Part shown: piece after piece, positions 6,787 through 64,000 of the stretch
Position numbering within the stretch: position 1 is the stretch's first letter
How the letters are laid out: each line of letters begins with the position of its first letter
Source: Stegostoma tigrinum
Lineage: Eukaryota
Direction of reading: 5' to 3'
NCBI RefSeq assembly: GCF_030684315.1
Contig: NC_081370.1
Location: forward strand, 34,180,728 to 34,244,727
DNA: 64,000 nt
The notes under the pieces: generated by a model
The model's input: the letters and a program-made list of their open reading frames with translations, nothing else
What the model was told of the DNA's origin: nothing
Databases searched by the model: none
Translations under genes and position numbers: made by a program

Positions 6787-7137
6787 CTCAGCCAAACGTT
6801 AGTTTATCCACACAATCTCTTACAATTTTGAATGGTTCAGAGGACTCTGTGAGCTGTGACGTGACTGGATTTTATCCTGAACTATTAAAGATCAGCTGGA
6901 TCAAAGTATCAAAACAGAGAACAGAAAATATTACATTCCTAAGTTACAGAAAGAAGTTTGGCAGGAAAAGTGATAAAACGTTTTATAAATCCAGTCAACT
7001 GAACATTAAACCAACAATAAAGGATGATGGTGACAGATACAGATGTGTCGTGGAGCATTCAACATTTCCTAATGGACTGACAATGGAATGTGCACTCACT
7101 GTACAAGTTGAGTCCGCTATTAACAGAACTCTGAATG
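6787..7137 (+). CDS. Ig C1-set domain exon of an IgSF type I membrane protein (B7-H6/NCR3LG1-like; SIRP-like or tapasin-like not excluded)
   Basis: Acceptor ttttctttccacacag, donor AATG|gtgagt; 351 bp, phase 1-1. Encodes AQPNVSLS...VSCDVTGFYPELLKISWIK...TFYKSSQLNIKPTIKDDGDRYRCVVEHSTF...LTVQ, with the C1-set motifs C.V.GFYP, W and Y.C.V.H. N-glycosylation sequons: NVS, NGS, NIT, NRT. Confidence 0.9.
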
Positions 7138-7294
7138 GTGAGTAGAAGGAAGGAAAAGAGTGAGTCAGAGAAGTGATGGGGAGCAGGATGGGAAGGTGGT
7201 TACATGGCAGGGAAAGAGAAAGTGGCTGGTATTGCACTAACGTCTCAATATTGACAACAAATTCAAAATGCTACACAAGCAGGGTTGGGTTAAT

Positions 7295-8730
7295 GACCTG
7301 ATGATAGTGTTGAAAGATTATTAATCCAGAAATTTGGCAAACGTTCTGGGGACCTTTGTTCAAATCCTGTCACAGCAGATAGTGGAATTTGAATTCAATA
7401 AAAAATATCAAAGTCTACTGATATCCATGAAACCCTGAGATGGCACAATGGCTTAGTAATTAGCACTGATGCCTCGCAGTGCCAGGATTTAGTTCCACCC
7501 TCAGGCAATGGAGTTTGCACATTCTTCCTGTCTTTGTGTGGGTTTCCTCTGGGTGCTCACATTTCCTTCTACAGTTCACAGATTTTCAGGTTAAGGTGGA
7601 TTGGCCATGCTACATTGTCCATAGTGTCCAGGGATGTACAGGCTAGGTGGATTAGCGATGGGAAAATGCAGGATTACAGAGATAGGGTGGATTTGGGTAG
7701 GATGCTCTTTGAAGGGCTGTTGTGGTCTTGATGGGCTGAATGGCCTACATCTGAACTGTAGGGATTCTATGATTCTATGATTGACGATAGTCAGAAGCCA
7801 CCTGGCTCACTAATGCCCTTCAGGAAAGGAAATCTGCCTTCCTCACCTGGTCTGGCGACAGCAATGTGATTGACTTTCAGTAGCCCCCTGGACTGGCCTG
7901 GCAAGCCACTCATTTCTATCAACTGGTACAAATTCTCAAAGAAATGAAACTGGAAGAACCACCTGGCAGTGATCTAGGCACCGGAAAAGACAATGGCAGG
8001 AACAGCCCCATAAATCCTGCAAAGTCCACCTCACTAACATCTGGGGGCTAGTGCCAAACTGGGAGAGCTCTGTCACAGACACGTTAAGCAACAGTTTGTC
8101 ATATTCAAACTCACTAAGTCATACCTGACAAACAAATCTGACCAGATACCACTGTCACCATCCCTGGATATGTCCTGTCTCACCGGCAGGACAGACCCAG
8201 CAGAGGCGGCGGGCTCAGTGGTAAACAGTCAGGAAGTAGCTGCCCTGGGAGTCCTCAACATTGACTTCAGATTCCCGAAGTCTCATGCCTTCAGGCTAAA
8301 CACAGGCAAGGAAACAGCCAGCTGGTGACCATGTACCATCCCTCCTCAGCTGATGAATCAATACTCTTCAATGTTGAACAACAGCAAGGTTGCAATATGT
8401 ACTCTAGGTGGGAGATTTCAATGTTCACCAGCAGGAGTAGTTCAGCAGCAGTTCTACTGATTGAGATGGTTGAGTCTTAAAGGAGATAACTGCTAGATAG
8501 AGTCTGTTGCAAGGGTGAAGGAACTAACGAGGGAAAAATATACTTGATCTCATCCTTATCAATCTATCTGTGACAGTATTGATAAGAGTGACCACAGCAC
8601 AGACCTTGTGGAGAGGATGTCCTGTCTTCACACTGAGAATATCCTTTATTAAATTGCATGGCACTATCACCATGCTACATGGGACAGACTTTAAACAGAT
8701 CGAGCAACTCAAGACTGGGCCATCAACACT
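7295..8730 (+). mobile_element. Degenerate LINE 5' portion (tRNA-like head followed by APE endonuclease), interrupted by an HE1-like SINE
   Basis: 7295-7440 plus 7781-7900 match the SINE at 9641-9890. Downstream are decayed APE motifs NIWGLVP, HRQDRPSRGGG and GDFNVH. Boundaries approximate. Confidence 0.65.
7441..7780 (+). mobile_element. HE1-like V-SINE, older copy
   Basis: Same head and V-core as 1488-1793; the tail ends gggattctatgattctatga. Confidence 0.8.
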
Positions 8731-12407: not shown

Positions 12408-12506
12408 AATCCCGTGATTATTTAGCCCGTGCCTTGGTTATAATTTGTGCGGTATTATTACTTATGATACTTGTTGGAATATACCTTTGGACAAAACGGT
12501 CAGAAG
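12408..12506 (+). CDS. Transmembrane exon of the IgSF gene
   Basis: Acceptor tattttataattttcag, donor GAAG|gtaaga; 99 bp, phase 1-1, in frame with the Ig exon. Encodes (E)SRDYLARALVIICAVLLLMILVGIYLWTKRSE: a ~20-aa hydrophobic span followed by KR. Confidence 0.9.
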
Positions 12507-14473: not shown

Positions 14474-14569
14474 AATTACAGAACACCCCCTCAAAGGCTG
14501 AAGCCGGTACTAACAATCAAGTGAAACGTTCTGATGAGTGTCAAAATCTGATGGGGACAGAACCTGAAG
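14474..14569 (+). CDS. Cytoplasmic exon A (96 bp)
   Basis: tgtgcttatgtag|AA...GAAG|gtaggc; phase 1-1; encodes (E)LQNTPSKAEAGTNNQVKRSDECQNLMGTEPE. Confidence 0.8.
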
Positions 14570-14818: not shown

Positions 14819-14914
14819 AATCACAGAACACTCTCTCAAAAGATAAAGTCGGGATTGACGAACAAGTGGAACTTTCGGATGAAACGCAAAATCTGATTGG
14901 AATAGAAAATGAGG
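14819..14914 (+). CDS. Cytoplasmic exon B (96 bp), paralogue of exon A
   Basis: tgtgcttttgtag|AA...GAGG|gtaggt; phase 1-1; encodes (E)SQNTLSKDKVGIDEQVELSDETQNLIGIENE. Confidence 0.8.
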
Positions 14915-18900: not shown

Positions 18901-19129
18901 TTTGAGCTCCTGAGATGCTGCTTGGCCTGCTGTGTTCATCCAGCCTCACATTTTATTATGTTAGAATGGTTAGATGTTTTAGTTTTGAACAGCACGTACT
19001 CAATGGGCCAAAGGCTTTTTTTCTGCCCTGTAGATCTTGAAGACTTTAAGATTCTAACTTGACACCACAATGCCCAACTCAACCCATCATCTATCCTAAT
19101 CTCTTTTCCACATACCTGCCTGCCTACCA

Positions 19130-19640
19130 TTTCACCCACCAGCACATTATCTCCTCATACACCTCCCATCATCACCCCACACACACCAGTTTCCCATCCC
19201 CTCACACACCTACCATCATCACCCTACACCCACCAACACCCTATCCCCTCACACACCTCCCATCATCACCCTACATCCACCAGCACCCTATCCCCTCACA
19301 CACCTCCCATCATCACCCTACATCCACCAGCACCCTATCCCCTCACACACCTCCCATCATCACCCTACATCCACCAGCACCCTATCCCCTCACACACCTC
19401 CCATCATCACCCTACATCCACCAGCACCCTATCCCCTCACACACCTCCCATCATCACCCTACATCCACCAGCACCCTATCCCCTCACACACCTCCCATCA
19501 TCACCCTACATCCACCAGCACCCTATCCCCTCACACACCTCCCATCATCACCCTACATCCACCAGCACCCTATCCCCTCACACGCCTCCCATCTTCACCC
19601 TACACCCACCAGCAGACTATCTCCTCACACACCTCATGCC
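19130..19640. repeat. 47-bp C-rich minisatellite at the start of every array unit
   Basis: Monomer cacacctcccatcatcaccctacatccaccagcaccctatcccctca. Unit 1 has two more monomers, and unit 5 one fewer, than units 2, 3, 4, 6 and 7. Confidence 0.95.
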
Positions 19641-19910
19641 CTAACCCTCAACTTCTGACACTCTAAACCCTATACCACTCTGCCCTCAAGAAACACCTTA
19701 ATTCTGACACAGTAACTGTCCCTGTATTGATCTCCACCCTTCATTCGTATCCTCCAAACATCTGCCAAACTTCTGCAACTCCCTCCAACTCATTCCTGTA
19801 CATACTTTGAGCACTTACACTTCCACGCAATGTGTCAGACTGGCTGCTGGATATTTACACCACAGCATATAGCACTGACTGCTGTCAATGGAGGCTTGCG
19901 TGGAGACTGT

Positions 19911-20001
19911 CTGATGAAGGGTGTAGGCCTGAAACGTCAGCTTTTGTGCTCCTGAGATGCAGCTGGGCCTGCTGTGTTCGTCCAGCCTCACACTTTATTA
20001 T
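19911..20001 (+). mobile_element. Solo Penelope pLTR fragment with a hammerhead-like core, one per unit (also starting at 26280, 32648, 39016, 45338, 51706, 58075)
   Basis: ctgatgaagggtgtaggcctgaaacgtcagcttttgtgctcctgagatgc...ccagcctcacactttatt matches 18869-18958. Confidence 0.85.
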
Positions 20002-21675
20002 ACTGGCTTGCAACTCGTAATGCTTTTCCCCAGTGCAGCCTCCGGTGGTTCCTGGACAGGCTTTTTTGTGACGGTATGTTTCTGTCCAGGGAAATCCAGA
20101 GGAGAAGCTTGAAAAGTGTCAGTGATTAATTTGTTTTTGATCTTTTTGGCAATGGTATCCCCCGCCCCGATCACAAATTTTAGACCTGCCTGTTAAATTT
20201 CCAATCTAGAAATTGAGCAAGTACTTTGACAAATACAGAGAACACTTTTGATGGAATGATGTATTCCTACATTTGGAGGAAGCAAAACAGGTGAATTTCA
20301 GAATTTTGCGCCAAGACCATGACTGCTGTTCTGGAAGACCTTTAATAACCTGATTGTGCCTGAGTTCATTTACAAAAGGCATTTCCTGCCAACTGCACCA
20401 CAAACCATATTTACTACATCTCCATCATCTAACTGCCAATAATCAGTTCTCAAATCTCAATTTACCTGCTGAACTCATTAATCTCACATTGAACGCTGTG
20501 TCAAAACTTACATCCATAACTCAACGCACAAATAGTGGCAGCTTTTCAATGATGTAGAATTCAATGATTGTACACTTTTCCAAAATCTTTTATCATCTAA
20601 GATGATTGCGCATGAAACAGAGATTTCCCAGAGCTGTGCTTACCTGTGAAAGATGAAAGCAGTTGGCCATGAATACAGTGCCATTCAACATGCATGACCT
20701 TCAATGAAATGTGTACATACCTGACCCGAACCATGACCAGGTTCCTGACAACAATAGCTATCCTTCTGGTAGTGACAGCATCAGCACTTAGGAAACTCTG
20801 CCCACCAAGATCACTGGGGTCTGTCTGCCTATCTTCTTGCCCCAAACCTACTGACCTCAGGCATAAGCATAGATACTTCCTGCAGGTGCAGGTTCAGCAA
20901 TAGTTACCACTGATGATGGGACTGCTGAGACTGCCAATATTGATGGCTGTCTAATAGGACACATGGATCTAGATGGACAGGTCATTCTATTTGCAAGATG
21001 GCAGCCTCAGCCATCAGCAACCTGGGTGAGAAATTACACCAAAGCTGATTGGTTACTGAATTGTACCTGTGGGGGACCTCCTTATTCTCTGGAATATCAA
21101 CCATAAACACACTTCAGCAAGCATTACCCTTTTTGTCCTTGGCACTATTGGTGCCATTCTAGTATCCATCATTCAGCACATTCTCATTATGTCAGATTGT
21201 TGTGTCGTGAATGTCCCATCCCAGTGCTTGAGCAAATTCCATCTTGGAAACTCCAGAACATCATTATTGGAAAGACACATTTTCATAGTTGACATCATTT
21301 GGGTAAGTTATAATTCCTGGTAACTCAAATTCAAGAATTGATGACATTTTCATCTGAGAACTCCAGTAATCTATCTTGTAGAAAAACATTTGATTTGTTC
21401 AATGATTTGATCACTTTGAGACATTTTGCAACTGCAGTACAGGACTATTTGAATCACCAAGTTATCGAGTTCTTCAAAAAATAGCTACTTTGCATTGACT
21501 GAGGTAAAAGAAGAATGGGGTGTATATGCACAGTGAGTAGCAGCTCTGCAAAGATAGAGACAATATTAATGCAGCATTAATCTGAAAACTGGTATAATAT
21601 ATCTTGAGGTAAATTTGTAAAGATCTTATGTTACTAGGTTTACCCTGACTATCTTGTATCTTTATGATGATGTAG

Positions 21676-47183: not shown

Positions 47184-49539
47184 GTAAGTTGCTACAATTT
47201 AAAAGTGTGACCGATTAAGAAATTGTCTGGGTGCAATACCTGATCTAATGCAATACTCTCACACTGGAATTGAATCATTGCCTGCTAAATTGGTACAGGT
47301 CTGACAGTATGTGTTTAATTCTTGTCTCTGGATCACAGGCTGTGCTGTACCATTTGCTACCTGCTGACTTACTTGATTTCAGGATGCTGCCAATGATATC
47401 CATGTTGTTCATTGGATGCATGCATTAGCAGAACCTTTTATTGTGCGAGGCTAAAGTTACTTAAAGACAATCTCCAGCTCTGATAGGAGGAGTTGTTATT
47501 GCAAAAATTAGTGCACTCAGTTGCAAAATAAACTTATGCTCTGATGCTTTGACCAAAAGTTAACTGTGTGAGGTAGCATCCAGTGAAGTCTTTCAGGAGG
47601 CTCAGAACTAGAGAACTAGGGTCAGCTATGAAAGAAGAAAGCCCTTCGGCCAGAAGTCAGTGCCATTGAACATACGTGAACTCAGTTGGATATATGAATA
47701 GATTCTATCTAGCCCATGAACAGGCTGTTTAGTAGCTAAAGGCATCCCGAAGGCAGTGACAGCATCAGCATTCTGGGCAACCTCAGCCCTTTAAGATCAC
47801 CACGGTCAAATGGGAGAAAGGTTGTCTCCTTGCGAAATGATGGCCTCGACCATGAGCAACACTGGGTCCTACATTGCACCAAAGTAGATTTATTTATAAC
47901 GTTGCAGCTGGGGGATGACCTCCCTACTCATCAGAATATTCAAACCCAAATATCCTTTGGAAAGGATCTCCTATTTGATTCGTTTGCACTACTGATGCGA
48001 ATCTAATGTCCACCATTCAGCACTTGTCCTATGTGTCAGATCATTCTGTGCTGATCTCCATTCTCAGTTCTAAGGCAAATTCCATCATGGAACCTCCAGT
48101 ACACCATGATTGAAAAGATACAGTTTGGCAGTTGAAATCACTTGGGGAAAGTAAAATTTCTGTCTTCTCAAATTCAAGACTTGATTGGCGTTTTCTGACA
48201 AAAATGCAATGATCAATCCTTGCAACTAACTGTATGATTTGTACAATGATTTGACCACTTCAAGACATTTCACATGTGCACACCAGGACCATTTGAATCA
48301 CTGATACATAGAATTCTTCAAAGAATAATTGTCCGAGGTAAATGTATAGCATCAACAGAAGCACAGGACAAATGACACACAGTGAGCAGCAGCTCTGCAA
48401 TACTTCAGAGAAAATTAACGCAGCACTCATAAGAAGATTTGCCTCATCTGTGCATAGATGTATTTGGACTGAGCTCAAATGAACGTGCGAACTACGTGAA
48501 CGCACAAAATCATTTTCACTGCGGTTTCTACTTGCTTATGTAGCTGAGTTTATGCTATCTTGTATTTTTGTGATGATATAGAAACACTGATCATTGCTGA
48601 GCATGAACAAAGCATTGCTACAAATACAAAAAAAAGACACAGAGGATCACTCAAAAGGGAAAGATAGATGCAATTATTTAAAACTAAGTGCAATTAAAAA
48701 TAATTATCTGAATGAAACAGGTGATCTAATACAAAACTGTAATGATTGAATCTGTTGAAGCCCTGGAAAATTTGGATGGAGATGACAGTGTGATTTAATT
48801 CCTGACTTTGCATGACAGACACACTGCACATTTTTCTTGGCTGCTAACTTCACTTTTCTGCCAATGAAATGCATTCTGTTAATTGAATTCAAGTATCAGC
48901 AGGGCCTTATATTGCCAGAAGGAGAAGTTACCAAAACCAAATCTCCATTTCATACAGTGGCCTCGTATAGTTACTGCACAGACTGGAGAAATCCTTTTGA
49001 AAATAAAATTCTGCTCTGGCCTGATTAACATCCGCCACGTTATTCAAAACATGCAGGATACAAGTACAGTTCAGAGAATATTTCCCCTTTTGATCCTTTG
49101 CACAATTGGTACAACTGTTACGGACATCATTCCACTCGTTTCTCTCTGTGGCAGAGTCAAATTGTTGGGTGATGCACTTGCATTCCAGTGCTTGAGCAAA
49201 TTTGGTTTAGTAACCTCCAGAACATCAATGTTGAAAAGATACATTTTCATAGATAACATCACAATCAGGCAAGATGACATTTCCGATTTGTCAACATCAA
49301 GAACTGCTTACTTTTTAACCTGAGTTCTGTCCCTCCAGAAAACAACATGGGTTGTACAATGATTTGACCACTTTCCAATATTGTGCAAGTTCATTCCAGG
49401 TTATTTGAATCACCAAACTATTGCATTCATTGTACTGATCTCAAGGTAACATGTGTGAATGTCATTCTTGCACAAAAGCACTACTCTCTTATATTACTGG
49501 GCTTACTCTGCACATCTTGTATTTTTTATTATGATGTAG

Positions 49540-49617
49540 AATCACCAGTAACAACTGAATCTCATCAAAATGCTGCTACGAATAAAGAAGGTGCAGAGGA
49601 TCAATCAAAACAGAACG
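49540..49617 (+). CDS. Repeat exon E, unit 5
   Basis: Same as unit 1 exon E. Confidence 0.7.
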
Positions 49618-52600
49618 GTGCGTTATCATGATATAAAATGTGACTAATTAATAAGTAATTATTTGGGTGCAAGGCCAGAACTAATGCAAAACTCTGACAA
49701 AGGAATTTGACAAAGCCCTTTTAAACTAAGTAAATCGAGTTGACTGTACATATTTAATGGTGCATTATGCATTTTCGGTACCTGCTACATCATTTAACTT
49801 CAGTGAGCTTTAACGACATCCAACTTGTACATTGGCTTCTTGCATGAGTAGGTCCTTATATTGTGAGTAGCACAAGTTACTCAAAGACAACATCCAGCTC
49901 CTAAACTGACTTACATTGTTACCTCAAAATGGGGTACACACACACATTCCGAAAATAAACTTTTGCTCTGACATTTCAACCAATGGTTAACATGTGTGAG
50001 ATATAAAGCACTAAGCTTTTCACTAGGTGCAAAATTAGAGATCCAGGTGGAAAAATTAAAAAGGAGCATTGTGCTGTGTTCTGAGGGGAGCACGACGTAT
50101 TCATGCAGGTATTCAGAAGCTAATAGAAAGAGAGCAGGTGAATTTCAGAATGTTGCTCCAAGCCCATGGATGCTGTTCAGGAAGAACTTTAAAAATCTGA
50201 CTCAATTTGACCATATGAATGAGTTCATATAGAGAGGGCATCCATGCCAACTACACCATTCAGCCCATTCACCACATCTCCAACATCTAATTCCCAACAG
50301 CCAGCCTTCAAATACAAACTAATGTCATGAACTCCTGAATCACTCACTGAACACAATTTGCACACACAACATTAAGCCGTTAAAAGAAAAGAGAAATTGC
50401 TGGAGAAGCTCACCAGATCTGGTAGCATCGATGAAGAGAAATCAGAGTTAACGTTTTAGGTCTGGTGGCCAATCCGAGCATCCTCTGTTTTTGTTTCTGC
50501 TTTGAAGCACCTGCAGTGCTTTCAATAGTTTTATTTCATGGCACGTTGTGGCTTTTCACTACCTGCTGCATTATTTGACTTCAGTGTGCTTCAACAAAAT
50601 CCAAATTGTTCATTAGGTCCTTGCAGGAATAGGTCATAAAATTTGAGAAGCACAAATTTTTTAAGACAATCTCCATCTCCTAGATGGCCTTACATTGTTC
50701 CTCTAAAAGGTTGGTGCACACATTTTTGAAATAATCTTGTGCTCTGACTTTTCGACCAGTGGTTAAAATGTATGACGTAGAATGTACTAACCTTTTCACT
50801 CGACACAGAATTAAAGGTCCAGGTAGAGAAATTGAAAAGGAGCAATGTACTGGTATTATAAATATTTATCTGAGTGAAGTACCTGATCTAGTACAAAACG
50901 ATAACGATTGAATTTGATCAAGCCCTGAAGACATTAAAATTCTAACTTGATACCACAATGCCCAACTCAACCCCTCATCTATCCTAATCTCTTTTCCACA
51001 TACCTGCCAGCCTACCATTTCACCCACCAGCACTCTATCTCCTCATACACCTCCCATCATCACCCCATGCACACCAGTTTCCCATCTCCTCACACACCTA
51101 CCATCATCACCCTACACCGACCAGCACCCTATCCCCTCACACACCTCCCATCATCACCCTACACCCACCAGCACCCTATCCCCTCACACACCTCCCATCA
51201 TCACCCTACACCCACCAGCACCCTATCCCCTCACACGCCTCCCATCATCACCCTACATCCACCAGCACCCTATCCCCTCACACGCCTCCCATCATCACCC
51301 TACACCCACCAGCACCCATATCCCCTCACACGCCTCCCATCATCACCCTACATCCACCAGCACCCTATCCCCTCACACACCTCCCATCTTCACCCTACAC
51401 CCACCAGCACACTATCTCCTCACACACCTCATGCCCTAACCCTCAACTTCTGACACTGTAAACCCTATACCACTCTGCCCTCAAGAAACACCTTAATTCT
51501 GACACAGTAACTGTCCCTGTATTGATCTCCACCCTTCATTCGTATCCTCCAAACATCTGCCAAACTTCTGCAACTCTCTCCAACTCATTCCTGTACATAC
51601 TTTGAGCACTTACACTTCCACGCAATGTGTCAGACTGGCTGCTGGATATTTACACCACAGCATATAGCACTGACTGCTGTCAATGGAGGCTTGCGTGGAG
51701 ACTGTCTGATGAAGGGTGTAGGCCTGAAACGTCAGCTTTTGTGCTCCTGAGATGCAGCTGGGCCTGCTGTGTTCGTCCAGCCTCACACTTTATTATACTG
51801 GCTTGCAACTCATAATGCTTTTCCCCAGTGCAGCCTCCGGTGGTTCCTGGACAGGCTTTTTTGTGACGGTATGTTTCTGTCCAGGGAAATCCAGAGGAGA
51901 AGCTTGAAAAGTGTCAGTGATTAATTTGTTTTTGATCTTTTTGGCAATGGTATCCCCCGCCCCGATCACAAATTTTAGACCTGCCTGTTAAATTTCCAAT
52001 CTAGAAATTGAGCAAGTACTTTGACAAATACAGAGAACACTTTTGATGGAATGATGTATTCCTACATTTGGAGGAAGCAAAACAGGTGAATTTCAGAATT
52101 TTGCGCCAAGACCATGACTGCTGTTCTGGAAGACCTTTAATAACCTGATTGTGCCTGAGTTCATTTACAAAAGGCATTTCCTGCCAACTGCACCACAAAC
52201 CATATTTACTACATCTCCATCATCTAACTGCCAATAATCAGTTCTCAAATCTCAATTTACCTGCTGAACTCATTAATCTCACATTGAACGCTGTGTCAAA
52301 ACTTACATCCATAACTCAACGCACAAATAGTGGCAGCTTTTCAATGATGTAGAATTCAATGATTGTACACTTTTCCAAAATCTTTTATCATCTAAGATGA
52401 TTGCACAAGAAACAGAGATTTCCCAGAGCTGTGCTTACCTGTGAAAGATGAAAGCAGTTGGTCATGAATACAGTGCCATTCAACATGCATGACCTTCAAT
52501 GAAATGTGTACATACCTGACCCGAACCATGACCAGGTTCCTGACAACAATAGCTGTCCTTCTGGTAGTGACAGCATCAGCACTTAGGAAACTCTGCCCAC

Positions 52601-53470
52601 CAAGATCACTGGGGTCTGTCTGCCTATCTTCTTGCCCCAAACCTACTGACCTCAGGCATAAGCATAGATACTTCCTGCAGGTGCAGGTTCAGCAATAGTT
52701 ACCACTGATGATGGGACTGCTGAGACTGCCAATATTGATGGCTGTCTAATAGGACACATGGATCTAGATGGACAGGTCATTCTATTTGCAAGATGGCAGC
52801 CTCAGCCATCAGCAACCTGGGTGAGAAATTACACCAAAGCTGATTGGTTACTGAATTGTACCTGTGGGGGACCTCCTTATTCTCTGGAATATCAACCATA
52901 AACACACTTCAGCAAGCATTACCCTTTTTGTCCTTGGCACTATTGGTGCCATTCTAGTATCCATCATTCAGCACATTCTCATTATGTCAGATTGTTGTGT
53001 CGTGAATGTCCCATCCCAGTGCTTGAGCAAATTCCATCTTGGAAACTCCAGAACATCATTATTGGAAAGACACATTTTCATAGTTGACATCATTTGGGTA
53101 AGTTATAATTCCTGGTAACTCAAATTCAAGAATTGATGACATTTTCATCTGAGAACTCCAGTAATCTATCTTGTAGAAAAACATTTGATTTGTTCAATGA
53201 TTTGATCACTTTGAGACATTTTGCAACTGCAGTACAGGACTATTTGAATCACCAAGTTATCGAGTTCTTCAAAAAATAGCTACTTTGCATTGACTGAGGT
53301 AAAAGAAGAATGGGGTGTATATGCACAGTGAGTAGCAGCTCTGCAAAGATAGAGACAATATTAATGCAGCATTAATCTGAAAACTGGTATAATATATCTT
53401 GAGGTAAATTTGTAAAGATCTTATGTTACTAGGTTTACCCTGACTATCTTGTATCTTTATGATGATGTAG

Positions 53471-53551
53471 AATCACAAGAGGTCTCTGAAAGTCAACAAA
53501 GTCATACTTGGGATACAAAACAAGATACAGAGAATCAGTCATTAGAGAAAC
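53471..53551 (+). CDS. Repeat exon C, unit 6
   Basis: Same as unit 1 exon C. Confidence 0.72.
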
Positions 53552-55907
53552 GTAAGTTGCTACAATTTAAAAGTGTGACCGATTAAGAAATTGTCTGGGT
53601 GCAATACCTGATCTAATGCAATACTCTCACACTGGAATTGAATCATTGCCTGCTAAATTGGTACAGGTCTGACAGTATGTGTTTAATTCTTGTCTCTGGA
53701 TCACAGGCTGTGCTGTACCATTTGCTACCTGCTGACTTACTTGATTTCAGGATGCTGCCAATGATATCCATGTTGTTCATTGGATGCATGCATTAGCAGA
53801 ACCTTTTATTGTGCGAGGCTAAAGTTACTTAAAGACAATCTCCAGCTCTGATAGGAGGAGTTGTTATTGCAAAAATTAGTGCACTCAGTTGCAAAATAAA
53901 CTTATGCTCTGATGCTTTGACCAAAAGTTAACTGTGTGAGGTAGCATCCAGTGAAGTCTTTCAGGAGGCTCAGAACTAGAGAACTAGGGTCAGCTATGAA
54001 AGAAGAAAGCCCTTCGGCCAGAAGTCAGTGCCATTGAACATACGTGAACTCAGTTGGATATATGAATAGATTCTATCTAGCCCATGAACAGGCTGTTTAG
54101 TAGCTAAAGGCATCCCGAAGGCAGTGACAGCATCAGCATTCTGGGCAACCTCAGCCCTTTAAGATCACCACGGTCAAATGGGAGAAAGGTTGTCTCCTTG
54201 CGAAATGATGGCCTCGACCATGAGCAACACTGGGTCCTACATTGCACCAAAGTAGATTTATTTATAACGTTGCAGCTGGGGGATGACCTCCCTACTCATC
54301 AGAATATTCAAACCCAAATATCCTTTGGAAAGGATCTCCTATTTGATTTGTTTGCACTACTGATGCGAATCTAATGTCCACCATTCAGCACTTGTCCTAT
54401 GTGTCAGATCATTCTGTGCTGATCTCCATTCTCAGTTCTAAGGCAAATTCCATCATGGAACCTCCAGTACACCATGATTGAAAAGATACAGTTTGGCAGT
54501 TGAAATCACTTGGGGAAAGTAAAATTTCTGTCTTCTCAAATTCAAGACTTGATTGGCGTTTTCTGACAAAAATGCAATGATCAATCCTTGCAACTAACTG
54601 TATGATTTGTACAATGATTTGACCACTTCAAGACATTTCACATGTGCACACCAGGACCATTTGAATCACTGATACATAGAATTCTTCAAAGAATAATTGT
54701 CCGAGGTAAATGTATAGCATCAACAGAAGCACAGGACAAATGACACACAGTGAGCAGCAGCTCTGCAATACTTCAGAGAAAATTAACGCAGCACTCATAA
54801 GAAGATTTGCCTCATCTGTGCATAGATGTATTTGGACTGAGCTCAAATGAACGTGCGAACTACGTGAACGCACAAAATCATTTTCACTGCGGTTTCTACT
54901 TGCTTATGTAGCTGAGTTTATGCTATCTTGTATTTTTGTGATGATATAGAAACACTGATCATTGCTGAGCATGAACAAAGCATTGCTACAAATACAAAAA
55001 AAAGACACAGAGGATCACTCAAAAGGGAAAGATAGATGCAATTATTTAAAACTAAGTGCAATTAAAAATAATTATCTGAATGAAACAGGTGATCTAATAC
55101 AAAACTGTAATGATTGAATCTGTTGAAGCCCTGGAAAATTTGGATGGAGATGACAGTGTGATTTAATTCCTGACTTTGCATGACAGACACACTGCACATT
55201 TTTCTTGGCTGCTAACTTCACTTTTCTGCCAATGAAATGCATTCTGTTAATTGAATTCAAGTATCAGCAGGGCCTTATATTGCCAGAAGGAGAAGTTACC
55301 AAAACCAAATCTCCATTTCATACAGTGGCCTCGTATAGTTACTGCACAGACTGGAGAAATCCTTTTGAAAATAAAATTCTGCTCTGGCCTGATTAACATC
55401 CGCCACGTTATTCAAAACATGCAGGATACAAGTACAGTTCAGAGAATATTTCCCCTTTTGATCCTTTGCACAATTGGTACAACTGTTACGGACATCATTC
55501 CACTCGTTTCTCTCTGTGGCAGAGTCAAATTGTTGGGTGATGCACTTGCATTCCAGTGCTTGAGCAAATTTGGTTTAGTAACCTCCAGAACATCAATGTT
55601 GAAAAGATACATTTTCATAGATAACATCACAATCAGGCAAGATGACATTTCCGATTTGTCAACATCAAGAACTGCTTACTTTTTAACCTGAGTTCTGTCC
55701 CTCCAGAAAACAACATGGGTTGTACAATGATTTGACCACTTTCCAATATTGTGCAAGTTCATTCCAGGTTATTTGAATCACCAAACTATTGCATTCATTG
55801 TACTGATCTCAAGGTAACATGTGTGAATGTCATTCTTGCACAAAAGCACTACTCTCTTATATTACTGGGCTTACTCTGCACATCTTGTATTTTTTATTAT
55901 GATGTAG

Positions 55908-55985
55908 AATCACCAGTAACAACTGAATCTCATCAAAATGCTGCTACGAATAAAGAAGGTGCAGAGGATCAATCAAAACAGAACG
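55908..55985 (+). CDS. Repeat exon E, unit 6
   Basis: Same as unit 1 exon E. Confidence 0.7.
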
Positions 55986-58900
55986 GTGCGTTATCATGAT
56001 ATAAAAATGTGACTAATTAATAAGTAATTATTTGGGTGCAAGGCCAGAACTAATGCAAAACTCTGACAATGGAATTTGACAAAGCCCTTTTAAACTAAGT
56101 AAATCGAGTTGACTGTACATATTTAATGGTGCATTATGCATTTTCGGTACCTGCTACATCATTTAACTTCAGTGAGCTTTAACGACATCCAACTTGTACA
56201 TTGGCTTCTTGCATGAGTAGGTCCTTATATTGTGAGTAGCACAAGTTACTCAAAGACAACATCCAGCTCCTAAACTGACTTACATTGTTACCTCAAAATG
56301 GGGTACACACACACATTCCGAAAATAAACTTTTGCTCTGACATTTCAACCAATGGTTAACATGTGTGAGATATAAAGCACTAAGCTTTTCACTAGGTGCA
56401 AAATTAGAGATCCAGGTGGAAAAATTAAAAAGGAGCATTGTGCTGTGTTCTGAGGGGAGCACGACGTATTCATGCAGGTATTCAGAAGCTAATAGAAAGA
56501 GAGCAGGTGAATTTCAGAATGTTGCTCCAAGCCCATGGATGCTGTTCAGGAAGAACTTTAAAAATCTGACTCAATTTGACCATATGAATGAGTTCATATA
56601 GAGAGGGCATCCATGCCAACTACACCATTCAGCCCATTCACCACATCTCCAACATCTAATTCCCAACAGCCAGCCTTCAAATACAAACTAATGTCATGAA
56701 CTCCTGAATCACTCACTGAACACAATTTGCACACACAACATTAAGCCGTTAAAAGAAAAGAGAAATTGCTGGAGAAGCTCACCAGGTCTGGTAGCATCGA
56801 TGAAGAGAAATCAGAGTTAACGTTTTAGGTCTGGTGGCCAATCCGAGCATCCTCTGTTTTTGTTTCTGCTTTGAAGCACCTGCAGTGCTTTCAATAGTTT
56901 TATTTCATGGCACGTTGTGGCTTTTCACTACCTGCTGCATTATTTGACTTCAGTGTGCTTCAACAAAATCCAAATTGTTCATTAGGTCCTTGCAGGAATA
57001 GGTCATAAAATTTGAGAAGCACAAATTTTTTAAGACAATCTCCATCTCCTAGATGGCCTTACATTGTTCCTCTAAAAGGTTGGTGCACACATTTTTGAAA
57101 TAATCTTGTGCTCTGACTTTTCGACCAGTGGTTAAAATGTATGACGTAGAATGTACTAACCTTTTCACTCGACGCAGAATTAAAGGTCCAGGTAGAGAAA
57201 TTGAAAAGGAGCAATGTACTGGTATTATAAATATTTATCTGAGTGAAGTACCTGATCTAGTACAAAACGATAACGATTGAATTTGATCAAGCCCTGAAGA
57301 CATTAAAATTCTAACTTGATACCACAATGCCCAACTCAACCCCTCATCTATCCTAATCTCTTTTCCACATACCTGCCAGCCTACCATTTCACCCACCAGC
57401 ACTCTATCTCCTCATACACCTCCCATCATCACCCCATGCACACCAGTTTCCCATCTCCTCACACACCTACCATCATCACCCTACACCGACCAGCACCCTA
57501 TCCCCTCACACACCTCCCATCATCACCCTACACCCACCAGCACCCTATCCCCTCACACACCTCCCATCATCACCCTACACCCACCAGCACCCTATCCCCT
57601 CACACGCCTCCCATCATCACCCTACATCCACCAGCACCCTATCCCCTCACACGCCTTCCATCATCACCCTACACCCACCAGCACCCATATCCCCTCACAC
57701 GCCTCCCATCATCACCCTACATCCACCAGCACCCTATCCCCTCACACACCTCCCATCTTCACCCTACACCCACCAGCACACTATCTCCTCACACACCTCA
57801 TGCCCTAACCCTCAACTTCTGACACTGTAAACCCTATACCACTCTGCCCTCAAGAAACACCTTAATTCTGACACAGTAACTGTCCCTGTATTGATCTCCA
57901 CCCTTCATTCGCATCCTCCAAACATCTGCCAAACTTCTGCAACTCTCTCCAACTCATTCCTGTACATACTTTGAGCACTTACACTTCCACGCAATGTGTC
58001 AGACTGGCTGCTGGATATTTACACCACAGCATATAGCACTGACTGCTGTCAATGGAGGCTTGCGTGGAGACTGTCTGATGAAGGGTGTAGGCCTGAAACG
58101 TCAGCTTTTGTGCTCCTGAGATGCTGCTGGGCCTGCTGTGTTCGTCCAGCCTCACACTTTATTATACTGGCTTGCAACTCATAATGCTTTTCCCCAGTGC
58201 AGCCTCCGGTGTTTCCTGGACAGGCTTTTTTGTGACGGTATGTTTCTGTCCAGGGAAATCCAGTTGAGAAGCTTGAAAAGTGTCAGTGATTAATTTGTTT
58301 TTGATCTTTTTGGCAATGGTATCCCCCGCCCCGATCACAAATTTTAGACCTGCCTGTTAAATTTCCAATCTAGAAATTGAGCAAGTACTTTGACAAATAC
58401 AGAGAACACTTTTGATGGAATGATGTATTCCTACATTTGGAGGAAGCAAAACAGGTGAATTTCAGAATTTTGCGCCAAGACCATGAATGCTGTTCTGGAA
58501 GACCTTTAATAACCTGATTGTGCCTGAGTTCATTTACAAAAGGCATTTCCTGCCAACTGCACCACAAACCATATTTACTACATCTCCATCATCTAACTGC
58601 CAATAATCAGTTCTCAAATCTCAATTTACCTGCTGAACTCATTAATCTCACATTGAACGCTGTGTCAAAACTTACATCCATAACTCAACGCACAAATAGT
58701 GGCAGCTTTTCAATGATGTAGAATTCAATGATTGTACACTTTTCCAAAATCTTTTATCATCTAAGATGATTGCACAAGAAACAAAGATTTCCCAGAGCTG
58801 TGCTTACCTGTGAAAGATGAAAGCAGTTGGTCATGAATACAGTGCCATTCAACATGCATGACCTTCAATGAAATGTGTACATACCTGACCCGAACCATGA

Positions 58901-59839
58901 CCAGGTTCCTGACAACAATAGCTGTCCTTCTGGTAGTGACAGCATCAGCACTTAGGAAACTCTGCCCACCAAGATCACTGGGGTCTGTCTGCCTATCTTC
59001 TTGCCCCAAACCTACTGACCTCAGGCATAAGCATAGATACTTCCTGCAGGTGCAGGTTCAGCAATAGTTACCACTGATGATGGGACTGCTGAGACTGCCA
59101 ATATTGATGGCTGTCTAATAGGACACATGGATCTAGATGGACAGGTCATTCTATTTGCAAGATGGCAGCCTCAGCCATCAGCAACCTGGGTGAGAAATTA
59201 CACCAAAGCTGATTGGTTACTGAATTGTACCTGTGGGGGACCTCCTTATTCTCTGGAATATCAACCATAAACACACTTCAGCAAGCATTACCCTTTTTGT
59301 CCTTGGCACTATTGGTGCCATTCTAGTATCCATCATTCAGCACATTCTCATTATGTCAGATTGTTGTGTCGTGAATGTCCCATCCCAGTTCTTGAGCAAA
59401 TTCCATCTTGGAAACTCCAGAACATCATTATTGGAAAGACACATTTTCATAGTTGACATCATTTGGGTAAGTTATAATTCCTGGTAACTCAAATTCAAGA
59501 ATTGATGACATTTTCATCTGAGAACTCCAGTAATCTATCTTGTAGAAAAACATTTGATTTGTTCAATGATTTGATCACTTTGAGACATTTTGCAACTGCA
59601 GTACAGGACTATTTGAATCACCAAGTTATCGAGTTCTTCAAAAAATAGCTACTTTGCATTGACTGAGGTAAAAGAAGAATGGGGTGTATATGCACAGTGA
59701 GTAGCAGCTCTGCAAAGATAGAGACAATATTAATGCAGCATTAATCTGAAAACTGGTATAATATATCTTGAGGTAAATTTGTAAAGATCTTATGTTACTA
59801 GGTTTACCCTGACTATCTTGTATCTTTATGATGATGTAG

Positions 59840-59920
59840 AATCACAAGAGGTCTCTGAAAGTCAACAAAGTCATACTTGGGATACAAAACAAGATACAGA
59901 GAATCAGTCATTAGAGAAAC
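59840..59920 (+). CDS. Repeat exon C, unit 7
   Basis: Same as unit 1 exon C. Confidence 0.72.
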
Positions 59921-62276
59921 GTAAGTTGCTACAATTTAAAAGTGTGACCGATTAAGAAATTGTCTGGGTGCAATACCTGATCTAATGCAATACTCTCACA
60001 CTGGAATTGAATCATTGCCTGCTAAATTGGTACAGGTCTGACAGTATGTGTTTAATTCTTGTCTCTGGATCACAGGCTGTGCTGTACCATTTGCTACCTG
60101 CTGACTTACTTGATTTCAGGATGCTGCCAATGATATCCATGTTGTTCATTGGATGCATGCATTAGCAGAACCTTTTATTGTGCGAGGCTAAAGTTACTTA
60201 AAGACAATCTCCAGCTCTGATAGGAGGAGTTGTTATTGCAAAAATTAGTGCACTCAGTTGCAAAATAAACTTATGCTCTGATGCTTTGACCAAAAGTTAA
60301 CTGTGTGAGGTAGCATCCAGTGAAGTCTTTCAGGAGGCTCAGAACTAGAGAACTAGGGTCAGCTATGAAAGAAGAAAGCCCTTCGGCCAGAAGTCAGTGC
60401 CATTGAACATACGTGAACTCAGTTGGATATATGAATAGATTCTATCTAGCCCATGAACAGGCTGTTTAGTAGCTAAAGGCATCCCGAAGGCAGTGACAGC
60501 ATCAGCATTCTGGGCAACCTCAGCCCTTTAAGATCACCACGGTCAAATGGGAGAAAGGTTGTCTCCTTGCGAAATGATGGCCTCGACCATGAGCAACACT
60601 GGGTCCTACATTGCACCAAAGTAGATTTATTTATAACGTTGCAGCTGGGGGATGACCTCCCTACTCATCAGAATATTCAAACCCAAATATCCTTTGGAAA
60701 GGATCTCCTATTTGATTCGTTTGCACTACTGATGCGAATCTAATGTCCACCATTCAGCACTTGTCCTATGTGTCAGATCATTCTGTGCTGATCTCCATTC
60801 TCAGTTCTAAGGCAAATTCCATCATGGAACCTCCAGTACACCATGATTGAAAAGATACAGTTTGGCAGTTGAAATCACTTGGGGAAAGTAAAATTTCTGT
60901 CTTCTCAAATTCAAGACTTGATTGGCGTTTTCTGACAAAAATGCAATGATCAATCCTTGCAACTAACTGTATGATTTGTACAATGATTTGACCACTTCAA
61001 GACATTTCACATGTGCACACCAGGACCATTTGAATCACTGATACATAGAATTCTTCAAAGAATAATTGTCCGAGGTAAATGTATAGCATCAACAGAAGCA
61101 CAGGACAAATGACACACAGTGAGCAGCAGCTCTGCAATACTTCAGAGAAAATTAACGCAGCACTCATAAGAAGATTTGCCTCATCTGTGCATAGATGTAT
61201 TTGGACTGAGCTCAAATGAACGTGCGAACTACGTGAACGCACAAAATCATTTTCACTGCGGTTTCTACTTGCTTATGTAGCTGAGTTTATGCTATCTTGT
61301 ATTTTTGTGATGATATAGAAACACTGATCATTGCTGAGCATGAACAAAGCATTGCTACAAATACAAAAAAAAGACACAGAGGATCACTCAAAAGGGAAAG
61401 ATAGATGCAATTATTTAAAACTAAGTGCAATTAAAAATAATTATCTGAATGAAACAGGTGCTCTAATACAAAACTGTAATGATTGAATCTGTTGAAGCCC
61501 TGGAAAATTTGGATGGAGATGACAGTGTGATTTAATTCCTGACTTTGCATGACAGACACACTGCACATTTTTCTTGGCTGCTAACTTCACTTTTCTGCCA
61601 ATGAAATGCATTCTGTTAATTGAATTCAAGTATCAGCAGGGCCTTATATTGCCAGAAGGAGAAGTTACCAAAACCAAATCTCCATTTCATACAGTGGCCT
61701 CGTATAGTTACTGCACAGACTGGAGAAATCCTTTTGAAAATAAAATTCTGCTCTGGCCTGATTAACATCCGCCACGTTATTCAAAACATGCAGGATACAA
61801 GTACAGTTCAGAGAATATTTCCCCTTTTGATCCTTTGCACAATTGGTACAACTGTTACGGACATCATTCCACTCGTTTCTCTCTGTGGCAGAGTCAAATT
61901 GTTGGGTGATGCACTTGCATTCCAGTGCTTGAGCAAATTTGGTTTAGTAACCTCCAGAACATCAATGTTGAAAAGATACATTTTCATAGATAACATCACA
62001 ATCAGGCAAGATGACATTTCCGATTTGTCAACATCAAGAACTGCTTACTTTTTAACCTGAGTTCTGTCCCTCCAGAAAACAACATGGGTTGTACAATGAT
62101 TTGACCACTTTCCAATATTGTGCAAGTTCATTCCAGGTTATTTGAATCACCAAACTATTGCATTCATTGTACTGATCTCAAGGTAACATGTGTGAATGTC
62201 ATTCTTGCACAAAAGCACTACTCTCTTATATTACTGGGCTTACTCTGCACATCTTGTATTTTTTATTATGATGTAG

Positions 62277-62354
62277 AATCACCAGTAACAACTGAATCTC
62301 ATCAAAATGCTGCTACGAATAAAGAAGGTGCAGAGGATCAATCAAAACAGAACG
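62277..62354 (+). CDS. Repeat exon E, unit 7
   Basis: Same as unit 1 exon E. Confidence 0.7.
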
Positions 62355-64000
62355 GTGCGTTATCATGATATAAAAATGTGACTAATTAATAAGTAATTAT
62401 TTGGGTGCAAGGCCAGAACTAATGCAAAACTCTGACAAAGGAATTTGACAAAGCCCTTTTAAACTAAGTAAATCGAGTTGACTGTACATATTTAATGGTG
62501 CATTATGCATTTTCGGTACCTGCTACATCATTTAACTTCAGTGAGCTTTAACGACATCCAACTTGTACATTGGCTTCTTGCATGAGTAGGTCCTTATATT
62601 GTGAGTAGCACAAGTTACTCAAAGACAACATCCAGCTCCTAAACTGACTTACATTGTTACCTCAAAATGGGGTACACACACACATTCCGAAAATAAACTT
62701 TTGCTCTGACATTTCAACCAATGGTTAACATGTGTGAGATATAAAGCACTAAGCTTTTCACTAGGTGCAAAATTAGAGATCCAGGTGGAAAAATTAAAAA
62801 GGAGCATTGTGCTGTGTTCTGAGGGGAGCACGACGTATTCATGCAGGTATTCAGAAGCTAATAGAAAGAGAGCAGGTGAATTTCAGAATGTTGCTCCAAG
62901 CCCATGGATGCTGTTCAGGAAGAACTTTAAAAATCTGACTCAATTTGACCATATGAATGAGTTCATATAGAGAGGGCATCCATGCCAACTACACCATTCA
63001 GCCCATTCACCACATCTCCAACATCTAATTCCCAACAGCCAGCCTTCAAATACAAACTAATGTCATGAACTCCTGAATCACTCACTGAACACAATTTGCA
63101 CACACAACATTAAGCCGTTAAAAGAAAAGAGAAATTGCTGGAGAAGCTCACCAGATCTGGTAGCATCGATGAAGAGAAATCAGAGTTAACGTTTTAGGTC
63201 TGGTGGCCAATCCGAGCATCCTCTGTTTTTGTTTCTGCTTTGAAGCACCTGCAGTGCTTTCAATAGTTTTATTTCATGGCACGTTGTGGCTTTTCACTAC
63301 CTGCTGCATTATTTGACTTCAGTGTGCTTCAACAAAATCCAAATTGTTCATTAGGTCCTTGCAGGAATAGGTCATAAAATTTGAGAAGCACAAATTTTTT
63401 AAGACAATCTCCATCTCCTAGATGGCCTTACATTGTTCCTCTAAAAGGTTGGTGCACACATTTTTGAAATAATCTTGTGCTCTGACTTTTCGACCAGTGG
63501 TTAAAATGTATGACGTAGAATGTACTAACCTTTTCACTCGACACAGAATTAAAGGTCCAGGTAGAGAAATTGAAAAGGAGCAATGTACTGGTATTATAAA
63601 TATTTATCTGAGTGAAGTACCTGATCTAGTACAAAACGATAACGATTGAATTTGATCAAGCCCTGAAGACATTAAAATTCTAACTTGATACCACAATGCC
63701 CAACTCAACCCCTCATCTATCCTAATCTCTTTTCCACATACCTGCCAGCCTACCATTTCACCCACCAGCACTCTATCTCCTCATACACCTCCCATCATCA
63801 CCCCATGCACACCAGTTTCCCATCTCCTCACACACCTACCATCATCACCCTACACCGACCAGCACCCTATCCCCTCACACACCTCCCATCATCACCCTAC
63901 ACCCACCAGCACCCTATCCCCTCACACACCTCCCATCATCACCCTACACCCACCAGCACCCTATCTCCTCACACGCCTCCCATCATCACCCTACATCCAC

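What the first reader, a model, noticed from the sequence alone, without database searches (positions are those of the whole stretch)
6787..64000. Immune-type Ig receptor whose cytoplasmic tail is encoded by a 6.4-kb intragenic macrosatellite of symmetric micro-exons
Seen: a C1-set Ig exon, a TM exon, and then at least 16 small exons (A, B and 7 x [C+E]). All are AG/GT-bounded, phase 1-1, multiples of 3 (96, 96, 81, 78 bp) and free of stops. C and E lie inside a near-identical 6.37-kb tandem unit that runs off the window. Spliced in order they give TM-KRSE-A-B-[ESQEVSESQQSHTWDTKQDTENQSLEK-QSPVTTESHQNAATNKEGAEDQSKQN]x7 or more. That is 53 aa per unit and over 430 aa of polar, acidic, probably disordered tail. 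Known: exon-repeat expansions usually lengthen extracellular or structural regions (LPA kringles, complement receptor 1, nebulin), whereas here the expansion is on the cytoplasmic side of an IgSF receptor. Inference: tail length could vary with array copy number between alleles and with in-frame exon skipping between transcripts. I cannot confirm the exons are used or that this is undescribed.
Basis: partly seen in the sequence, partly recalled or inferred. Interest (0 to 1): 0.88.

Follow-up and report, generated by a model that had tools for sequence, protein, structure and literature searches.

The report
Shark receptor tail encoded by macrosatellite
A shark B7-H6-like immune surface gene builds its long, floppy, acidic inner tail from two small exons that sit in each copy of a nearly identical 6.4-kb tandem repeat, and a transcript contig shows the two exons are spliced together as predicted.

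Summary
From about 19038 to the window's end there are seven 6368-6369-bp units, 99.5-100% alike. Each carries an identical 81-bp exon C and 78-bp exon E, AG/GT-bounded and phase 1-1. A C1-set Ig exon (6787-7137, not 7140), a TM exon and two 96-bp exons A and B lie upstream.

Exon syntax alone proves little: one unit holds 80 chance segments of that form. Three other lines carry the case.
- Run X5, which behaves as a transcriptome, has a 189-nt contig joining 21756 to 24113 (GT..AG). Its length equals 81+78+30, as expected for a closed C-E cycle at k=31.
- The closest relative (Chiloscyllium plagiosum XP_043561701.1, 71% identical in C1) is V-C1-TM, an A-like exon and about twelve 27-residue acidic cassettes. 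Its RefSeq isoforms differ by whole cassettes.
- The 40 nt before each exon are better conserved between old exon copies than the exons themselves.

The family's ectodomain matches human B7-H6 best. The tail is predicted disordered.

The repeat layout resembles LPA KIV-2. Not tested: the B>C junction, units per transcript and copy-number variation. An overlapping window of this genome also noted the array (s1-882123).

The parts
6787..7137 (+). C1-set Ig exon (351 nt, phase 1-1) of the B7-H6-like gene. The V exon lies upstream of the window.
   Evidence: Pfam C1-set E 1.8e-13. AG before the exon and GTGAGT after it. 69-71% identical to Chiloscyllium XP_043561701.1 residues 111-230.
12408..12506 (+). 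Transmembrane exon (99 nt, phase 1-1): about 20 hydrophobic residues followed by a basic stop-transfer K-R.
   Evidence: Translation and splice sites. 45-50% identical to the TM region of the Chiloscyllium homologue.
14474..14569 (+). Tail exon A (96 nt, phase 1-1). Carries SDExQNLM, an acidic-dileucine-like motif.
   Evidence: 55% identical to P0005 residues 271-301, E 1e-6. tblastn hit.
14819..14914 (+). Tail exon B (96 nt, phase 1-1), a 345-bp tandem duplicate of A. Carries SDExQNLI.
   Evidence: A/B block 79% identical. (50% to P0005 residues 270-301). The 40 nt upstream are 90% conserved against 74% for the exon.
19038..64000 (+). Tandem array of 6368-6369-bp units: first partial unit, six full units and a cut one. 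It runs off the window. Each unit holds an older triplication of an exon-plus-intron block (C, D, E).
   Evidence: left boundary at 19038, matching 25500 in the next unit. (C/D/E blocks 66-70% alike). (unit-specific variants).
19136..19635 (.). 47-bp C/A-rich minisatellite just inside the array's left boundary. It recurs once per unit (25595, 31963, 38331, 44700, 51021, 57390, 63759) with 7.7-10.6 copies.
21676..21756 (+). Exon C, copy 1 (81 nt, phase 1-1).
   Evidence: Covered by X5 contig record 30 and joined to E.
23155..23238 (+). Exon D, a decayed homologue of C and E. The acceptor is kept, the donor is lost, and it ends in an in-frame TAG. It repeats in each unit.
   Evidence: No X5 coverage.
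24113..24190 (+). Exon E, copy 1 (78 nt, phase 1-1).
   Evidence: Joined to C in the X5 contig, joint 21756>24113 GT..AG.
28045..28125 (+). Exon C, copy 2.
30482..30559 (+). Exon E, copy 2.
34413..34493 (+). Exon C, copy 3.
36850..36927 (+). Exon E, copy 3.
40781..40861 (+). Exon C, copy 4.
43218..43295 (+). Exon E, copy 4.
47103..47183 (+). Exon C, copy 5.
49540..49617 (+). Exon E, copy 5.
53471..53551 (+). Exon C, copy 6.
55908..55985 (+). Exon E, copy 6.
59840..59920 (+). Exon C, copy 7.
62277..62354 (+). Exon E, copy 7.

Best explanation
This is the 3' two-thirds of an expressed shark gene of the B7-H6-like (NCR3LG1-like) IgSF family. It encodes a type I membrane protein. The order is V (upstream of the window), C1, TM, two membrane-proximal exons A and B that each carry a conserved SDExQNL[MIL] motif, and then a run of alternating 27- and 26-residue acidic, Ser/Thr/Gln-rich cassettes.

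The two cassettes (C, E) sit in every copy of a 6.37-kb higher-order repeat. That repeat arose in two steps. First came an old tandem triplication of one exon with its intron, giving C, D and E, now 62-70% alike, with D decayed. Then the whole 6.37-kb block was amplified recently to at least 7 copies (99.5-100% alike). The likely mechanism is unequal exchange, and the array boundary lies next to a 47-bp minisatellite.

Every intron is phase 1 and every exon is a multiple of three. The tail therefore stays in frame whatever the number of units, and whichever cassettes are skipped.

Shown: the array, the exon anatomy, the C>E splice in RNA, homology of C1/TM/A/B to a bamboo-shark protein with the same architecture, and predicted disorder of that homologue's tail.

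Inferred: E>C splicing (from the contig length), B>C splicing, and the cytoplasmic location (type I topology plus K-R after the TM).

My guess at function carries about 0.3 confidence. A and B would provide adaptor-binding sorting signals. The repeats would form a disordered acidic extension whose length is set by copy number and splicing, acting as a spacer or multivalent docking region.
For: - Array and exons.
- Older C/D/E triplication.
- RNA: X5 holds all sampled words of the Ig exon. It covers only C and E within 5.7 kb of the unit, while DNA runs X2 and X4 cover all of it. Its 189-nt contig matches C and E without a mismatch and joins 21756>24113 with GT..AG. 189 = 81+78+30.
- Homologues: P0005 (XP_043561701.1, Chiloscyllium plagiosum) is 71% identical in C1, and is V-C1-TM, an A-like exon and about 12 x 27-aa units.
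- Isoforms: X12-X20 differ by whole units. The junction residue switches between G, R and E, as expected for a phase-1 split codon.
- Exon-level homology: A and B match P0005 residues 271-301 at 50-55% identity.
- Family assignment: the V-C1 of the 67%-identical basking-shark relative matches human B7-H6 best, at 5e-29, against 1.7e-15 for the next family.
- Splice-signal constraint: acceptor regions are more conserved than exons (A/B 90% against 74%; C/E 78% against 63%).
- Disorder: charge-hydropathy. AF2 of P0005 gives V and C1 pLDDT above 90, a TM helix, and tail residues 267-645 below 50 with no secondary structure.
- Units are distinct copies, with private and shared variants.
Against: - No read evidence links B to C or TM to A. 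Only one read-laying run was allowed, and B and C lie 6.8 kb apart.
- E>C splicing rests on the contig's length, not on a listed joint.
- X5 is not on record as RNA. Its nature is inferred from its behaviour.
- C and E match the Chiloscyllium repeats only through short motifs (E 0.02-0.5), so the repeats evolve fast and no sequence constraint on them is shown.
- No variable site falls in C or E, but only about one would be expected.
- The gene's end lies outside the window.
- The RefSeq isoforms are computed models.
- The functional reading is motif- and composition-based only.
Confidence: 0.8

Rival explanations
1. C and E belong to a separate downstream transcription unit, an acidic repeat protein or a non-coding transcript. 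The B7-H6-like gene would end after exon B or earlier, so the receptor has no macrosatellite tail.
For: No junction from B (14914) to C (21676) was observed, because the stretch laid did not include B. No protein of this species spanning both parts was found.
Against: - The closest homologue joins V-C1-TM-A directly to the repeated cassettes in one RefSeq model, with many isoforms.
- A, B, C, D and E are homologous exons with homologous flanks, in the same phase and on the same strand.
- B ends in a good donor with no in-frame stop.
- No start exon or promoter-like feature stands out between 14914 and 21676. tblastn of relatives finds nothing there.
- X5 holds both the Ig exon and the C-E contig.
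Confidence: 0.08
2. The array is inflated or created by assembly. Only one to three units exist, so the long tail is an artefact even though C and E are real exons.
For: Units are 99.5-100% identical, which is hard to assemble. Short-read contigs of X2 and X4 collapse the array to one unit, so they give no copy number.
Against: - Units carry private and block-shared variants, and a 47-bp deletion shared by units 5 and 8.
- The DNA contigs carry the letters of the later units rather than those of unit 1 at 9 sites. X2 and X4 resolve site 21786 differently, so several unit types are present in the reads.
- A closed C-E cycle in RNA needs at least two consecutive units.
- The bamboo-shark homologue has about 12 cassettes.
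Confidence: 0.05
3. The array exons are spliced only into minor or aberrant transcripts.
For: - D keeps its acceptor and ends in a stop, with AATAAA/ATTAAA-type hexamers downstream.
- The acceptors of C and E have purine-rich, weak pyrimidine tracts, typical of cassette exons.
- Short relatives exist, such as the 273-aa Cetorhinus protein.
Against: X5 has no contig over D, while the C-E contig is the only and well-supported X5 record there. Contig depth is no measure of isoform share, so this rival is weakened but not excluded.
Confidence: 0.07

Closest known systems
Chicken BG genes (butyrophilin/B7 superfamily), and the heptad exons of butyrophilins
   Same: A type I IgSF membrane protein of the B7 superfamily. 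Its long cytoplasmic tail is encoded by many small in-frame exons derived by tandem duplication. Exon number differs between genes and alleles, and alternative splicing changes the tail (13-36 exons; PMC4046983).
   Different: BG exons are 21 (or 24) nt heptads predicted to form a coiled coil, separated by short introns. Here the exons are 78-96 nt and the tail is acidic and polar, predicted to lack structure. There are two exons per 6.37-kb near-identical unit. The ectodomain is V-C1 of B7-H6 type, not a single V.
Human LPA kringle IV type 2 copy-number repeat
   Same: An intragenic tandem array of about 5.5-5.6-kb near-identical units, each with two in-frame exons. Protein length follows copy number (PMC6314250 and PMC4378929).
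   Different: KIV-2 encodes a folded extracellular kringle in a secreted protein. Here the unit encodes 53 residues of disordered sequence behind a TM segment. Copy-number polymorphism is documented for LPA and untested here.
Chiloscyllium plagiosum 'ribosome-binding protein 1-like' (XP_043561695-703), and related shark and chimaera RefSeq models
   Same: The closest relative: 71% identical in C1, with homologous TM and A exons. It has the same V-C1-TM-A-cassette order, 27-residue phase-1 cassettes, and isoforms that differ by whole cassettes. Other B7-H6-like genes with acidic repetitive tails occur in Chiloscyllium (43-aa units), Stegostoma, Heptranchias and Callorhinchus.
   Different: These are computed models with uninformative names. 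I found no paper on them. Their cassettes differ from each other by a few residues, whereas here all copies are identical and alternate between two types.
Human B7-H6 (NCR3LG1)
   Same: A V-C1 ectodomain. The full ectodomain of a 67%-identical shark relative matches B7-H6 structures best, at 5e-29. The window's C1 alone matches B7-H6 at 2.5e-7.
   Different: From my own knowledge, the human tail is a single non-repetitive region with tyrosine-based and SH2/SH3-binding motifs. The tail exons here contain no tyrosine at all. Orthology and NKp30 binding are untested.

Membership tests
B7-H6 (NCR3LG1)-like IgSF | Membrane-proximal C1-set Ig domain | tested here: met
   Pfam C1-set at E 1.8e-13, above the cut-off. 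Canonical C..W..C pattern.
B7-H6 (NCR3LG1)-like IgSF | N-terminal V domain, with the whole ectodomain closest to B7-H6 | tested here: inconclusive
   The V exon is not in the window. The test was made on relatives: the V-C1 of P0007 (67% identical in C1) matches B7-H6 at 5e-29, against CD276 at 1.7e-15. The window's C1 alone scores better with IgM C-mu (7e-13) than with B7-H6 (2.5e-7).
B7-H6 (NCR3LG1)-like IgSF | Single-pass type I membrane anchor after C1 | tested here: met
   TM exon 12408-12506 with K-R after the hydrophobic run. The homologue's model has a helix at residues 220-265.
B7-H6 (NCR3LG1)-like IgSF | Binds NKp30; orthologous position | not testable with these tools
This needs binding assays and synteny.
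B7-H6 (NCR3LG1)-like IgSF | Human-type cytoplasmic tail with tyrosine-based motifs | tested here: not met
   There is no tyrosine in A, B, C or E.
BG/butyrophilin-type cytoplasmic exon arrays | Tail encoded by many small, symmetric, tandemly duplicated exons | tested here: met
   A, B, C and E are homologous, phase 1-1 and multiples of 3. The C>E splice was seen.
BG/butyrophilin-type cytoplasmic exon arrays | 21-nt heptad exons forming a coiled coil | tested here: not met
   Exons are 78-96 nt with 1-8 hydrophobic residues each. They lie on the disordered side of the charge-hydropathy plot. The homologue's tail model has no helix.
BG/butyrophilin-type cytoplasmic exon arrays | B30.2 domain at the C-terminus (butyrophilins) | not testable with these tools
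   The gene's end lies beyond the window. The Chiloscyllium homologue has none.
Coding macrosatellite (LPA KIV-2 type) | Kilobase-scale, near-identical tandem units inside a gene | tested here: met
   Units of 6368-6369 bp at 99.5-100% identity, at least 7 of them.
Coding macrosatellite (LPA KIV-2 type) | Each unit contributes in-frame exons that are present in RNA | tested here: met
   Joint 21756>24113 in the X5 contig with no mismatches. The contig length fits a closed cycle.
Coding macrosatellite (LPA KIV-2 type) | Copy number varies between alleles and sets protein size | not testable with these tools
   Only contigs of one or two samples were available, and they give no depth.

The most novel reading that the evidence does not exclude
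The array is a copy-number-polymorphic coding macrosatellite, comparable to LPA KIV-2 but in an NK-ligand-like immune gene. Individuals and alleles would differ by steps of 53 residues in a disordered cytoplasmic tail. Combinatorial skipping of phase-1 cassettes would add a second ladder of lengths. Tail length would tune trafficking or signalling of a rapidly evolving B7-H6-like ligand family that is so far undescribed in cartilaginous fish.
Probability: 0.3. Interest if true: 0.75.

Novelty: new variant of a known kind. Interest (0 to 1): 0.6.

Why it matters
Transcribed macrosatellites that add protein modules are rare, and the best known ones encode folded extracellular domains. Here one encodes at least 370 residues in the window of disordered cytoplasmic sequence, in a member of an immune ligand family. 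If an unchecked note on the array's extent is right, the figure is about 600 residues.

The case also shows that cartilaginous fish carry a whole set of B7-H6-like genes with long cassette-built tails. These are hidden in databases under names such as 'ribosome-binding protein 1-like' or 'retinitis pigmentosa 1-like 1'.

This gives a second, independent example, beside chicken BG genes, of B7-superfamily members evolving through tail-exon arrays. It also offers a tractable system for asking what tail length does for such receptors.

Tried and rejected
- I searched the open frame around exon C (window:27990-28157) in the 5.8-billion-protein collection. No candidate came back.
- Two searches with the Chiloscyllium protein (whole, and residues 113-300) found no protein of the window's own species.
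- Run X1 (another organism, possibly RNA) gave nothing on C or E.
- Exon D as a repeated alternative terminal exon: no transcript coverage in X5.
- The coiled-coil or heptad reading was rejected on composition and on the AF2 model.
- Rfam found nothing relevant.
- No V exon is in the window, and no further exon between B and the array was found by tblastn with relatives.
- Testing selection on C and E from variation between units has no power: 0 sites observed against about 1 expected.
- Papers PMC4594805 and PMC3709836 on B7H6 evolution are not held.
- I neither built nor searched the joined sequence.
Full report
**1. What is in the sequence**

The right two-thirds of the window is a tandem array.
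- Self-comparison peaks at shifts of 6368 and 6369.
- One unit laid on the window gives full-length matches at 23632, 30001, 36369, 42737, 49059 and 55427, and a cut copy from 61796. Identity is 99.4-100%.
- A first, partial and slightly older unit (98.96%) begins at 19038/19203.
- A 47-bp C/A-rich minisatellite starts about 100 nt inside the left boundary and recurs once per unit, with 7.7-10.6 copies.
- The window has no N.

Each unit also holds three diverged copies of a block of about 1.2-1.4 kb, made of one exon plus intron. These are C, D and E, 66-70% alike. The array therefore has two levels: an old single-exon triplication, then a recent amplification of the 6.37-kb block.

**2. The exons**

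- All seven C copies (81 nt) and all seven E copies (78 nt) are identical. They follow AG, precede GT, and are open in phase 1-1.
- A and B (96 nt each) are a 345-bp tandem pair.
- The TM exon is 12408-12506.
- The Ig exon has its donor (GTGAGT) at 7138, so it is 6787-7137, 351 nt. It is a C1-set domain (Pfam E 1.8e-13; PDB matches).
- D (23155-23238) has lost its donor and ends in TAG.

Syntax alone is weak evidence. One unit contains 80 AG..GT segments of 60-120 nt that are multiples of three and open in this phase.

A better internal signal comes from the old paralogous copies. The 40 nt upstream of the acceptor are more conserved than the exon or the other flanks: A/B 90% against 74%, C/E 78% against 63%. 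This fits selection on splicing signals combined with fast-evolving coding sequence.

**3. RNA evidence**

The Ig exon was used to find runs. Four runs of one organism hold all of its sampled words, and none is on record as RNA.

I laid 19800-25500, chosen to avoid the minisatellite.
- X2 and X4 cover the whole stretch with long contigs, so they are DNA.
- X5 (55 Mb of contigs) covers nothing in the unit apart from dispersed-repeat pieces and one 189-nt contig.
- That contig matches 21675-21756 and 24113-24190 without a mismatch. It joins 21756 to 24113, skipping 2356 nt with GT..AG ends.

This is exactly the predicted C>E junction. X5 therefore behaves as a transcriptome in which the gene is expressed.

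The contig has 26 further letters before C and 3 after E, and 189 = 81+78+30. That is the length a closed C-E-C cycle yields in a k=31 graph. I take this as indirect evidence for the E>C junction, and hence for at least two consecutive units in RNA. It is an inference, because the 'go back' joint was not among the rows shown.

D is not covered in X5. TM>A>B>C could not be tested: one call of at most 6 kb was allowed, and B and C lie 6.8 kb apart.

**4. Is the array an assembly artefact?**

No, on present evidence.
- Units differ at about 35 sites outside the minisatellite, some private and some shared by blocks. Units 5-7 share two sites, and units 5 and 8 share a 47-bp deletion.
- The DNA contigs carry the later units' letters at the nine sites where unit 1 differs. 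X2 and X4 choose different letters at 21786, a site that differs among units.

Copy number itself cannot be read from contigs. An unchecked note from the next window puts the array's end about 31.5 kb beyond this window (s1-882123), which would make about 12 units.

**5. Relatives**

A full HMMER scan with the C1 exon found P0005 as the best single-Ig relative. This is XP_043561701.1, 'ribosome-binding protein 1-like isoform X18' of Chiloscyllium plagiosum, 71% identical.
- Its order is V, C1, TM, a segment 50-55% identical to exons A and B (E 1e-6), about twelve 27-residue acidic units, and a short end piece.
- Isoforms X12-X20 (591-675 aa) differ by presence or absence of whole units.
- The residue at unit junctions switches between G, R and E. 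That is what a phase-1 split codon does when the upstream exon changes.

The exon phase and cassette logic are therefore shared between species.

C and E match those units only through short motifs at the unit's start and end, so the repeats evolve quickly.

Other B7-H6-like proteins with repetitive acidic tails are a neighbouring Chiloscyllium gene (43-aa units, at least 10 isoforms), and models from C. punctatum, Stegostoma, Heptranchias and Callorhinchus. All carry automatic names that reflect low complexity.

**6. Family**

The whole V-C1 ectodomain of the 67%-identical basking-shark relative, which RefSeq names NCR3LG1-like, matches human B7-H6 structures at 5e-29. The next best are CD276 at 1.7e-15 and TAPBPR at 1e-13. 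The family is therefore B7-H6-like.

For the window itself only C1 is visible. On its own it is closer to IgM C-mu than to B7-H6. Earlier notes of the scan place the V exon and intron 1 just upstream, and describe a cluster of such genes downstream.

**7. How it probably works**

The topology is type I, so the exons after the TM are cytoplasmic. This rests on the K-R after the hydrophobic run and on homologues that have signal peptides.

A, B, C and E contain no tyrosine and few hydrophobic residues, and they lie on the disordered side of the charge-hydropathy plot.

AlphaFold2 on the Chiloscyllium protein, with a 19-sequence alignment, gives confident V and C1 domains (pLDDT above 90) and a TM helix. 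Tail residues 267-645 score below 50 and have no secondary structure.

The only motif conserved between species is SDExQNL[MIL] in A, B and the bamboo-shark exon. It fits the acidic dileucine pattern [DE]xxxL[LI] that binds AP adaptors. That pattern is my own knowledge and was not tested here.

My best guess is that A and B carry sorting signals, and that the C/E run is a flexible acidic extension. Its length would be set by unit number in the genome and by which cassettes are spliced in.

**8. Comparison with what is known**

Two precedents bracket the finding.
- Chicken BG genes (B7/butyrophilin superfamily) encode their cytoplasmic tails with 13-36 exons of 21 nt (PMC4046983). Cytoplasmic exon-array expansion in an IgSF receptor is therefore known, but those exons are heptads for a coiled coil.
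- The LPA KIV-2 repeat is a 5.5-5.6-kb unit with two exons, whose copy number sets protein size (PMC6314250 and PMC4378929). It encodes a folded extracellular domain.

Nurse-shark UrIg2 shows near-identical duplications of two adjacent Ig exons (PMC12227049).

I found no paper on shark B7-H6-like tails. Two key B7H6 papers are not held.

**9. Verdict**

I class it as a new variant of known kinds. The open points are the B>C junction, the number of units per mRNA, copy-number variation and function.

The joined sequence was neither built nor searched.

Noticed in passing
proteins P0006, P0058, P0153, P0013, P0001 and many others: Most of the best 150 relatives of the C1 exon have a TM segment at about residue 230-330. 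This is followed by 300-1500 residues that contain further C1-like Ig stretches, that is, Ig-like domains behind the membrane anchor. They come from sharks, skate, chimaera and coelacanth. This agrees with other first-stage notes on this genome.
   Followed up: partly
window 14474-14569 and 14819-14914; P0005 residues 289-296: The motif SDExQNL[MIL] is conserved in exons A and B and in the bamboo-shark homologue. It looks like a serine-preceded acidic dileucine sorting signal.
   Followed up: partly
window 1948-4725 (+): Two long LINE ORFs, an endonuclease/exonuclease/phosphatase domain plus reverse transcriptase, lie in the intron before the C1 exon. They are on the same strand as the gene. 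A further RT fragment lies at about 8.5-9.7 kb in the C1-TM intron.
   Followed up: partly
window 1333-1406 (+): A tRNA-like Rfam match just above threshold (30.8 bits), probably the head of a SINE.
   Followed up: no
window 17755-18264 (-): A 169-aa ORF with a GIY-YIG-looking stretch and a short internal duplication, just upstream of the array. It could be a Penelope-like element remnant, which is my own recollection. Pfam gave no hit.
   Followed up: partly
window 19907-20001, 24957-25041, 17443-17534, 18772-18959: Short dispersed repeat pieces (SINE-like, in both orientations) flank the minisatellite. They have enormous k-mer depth in every run, including the other organism's run X1.
   Followed up: no
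window 42737-49058 and 61796-64000: Units 5 and 8 share a 47-bp minisatellite deletion and two nearby variants. Units 5-7 share two SNPs. This suggests that blocks of several units were copied together.
   Followed up: partly
Chiloscyllium plagiosum XP_043561671-82 (P0146 cluster): A second B7-H6-like gene on the same bamboo-shark contig has 43-residue acidic cassettes and at least 10 isoforms. They are named 'retinitis pigmentosa 1-like 1', 'myb-like protein X' and 'midasin-like'.
   Followed up: partly
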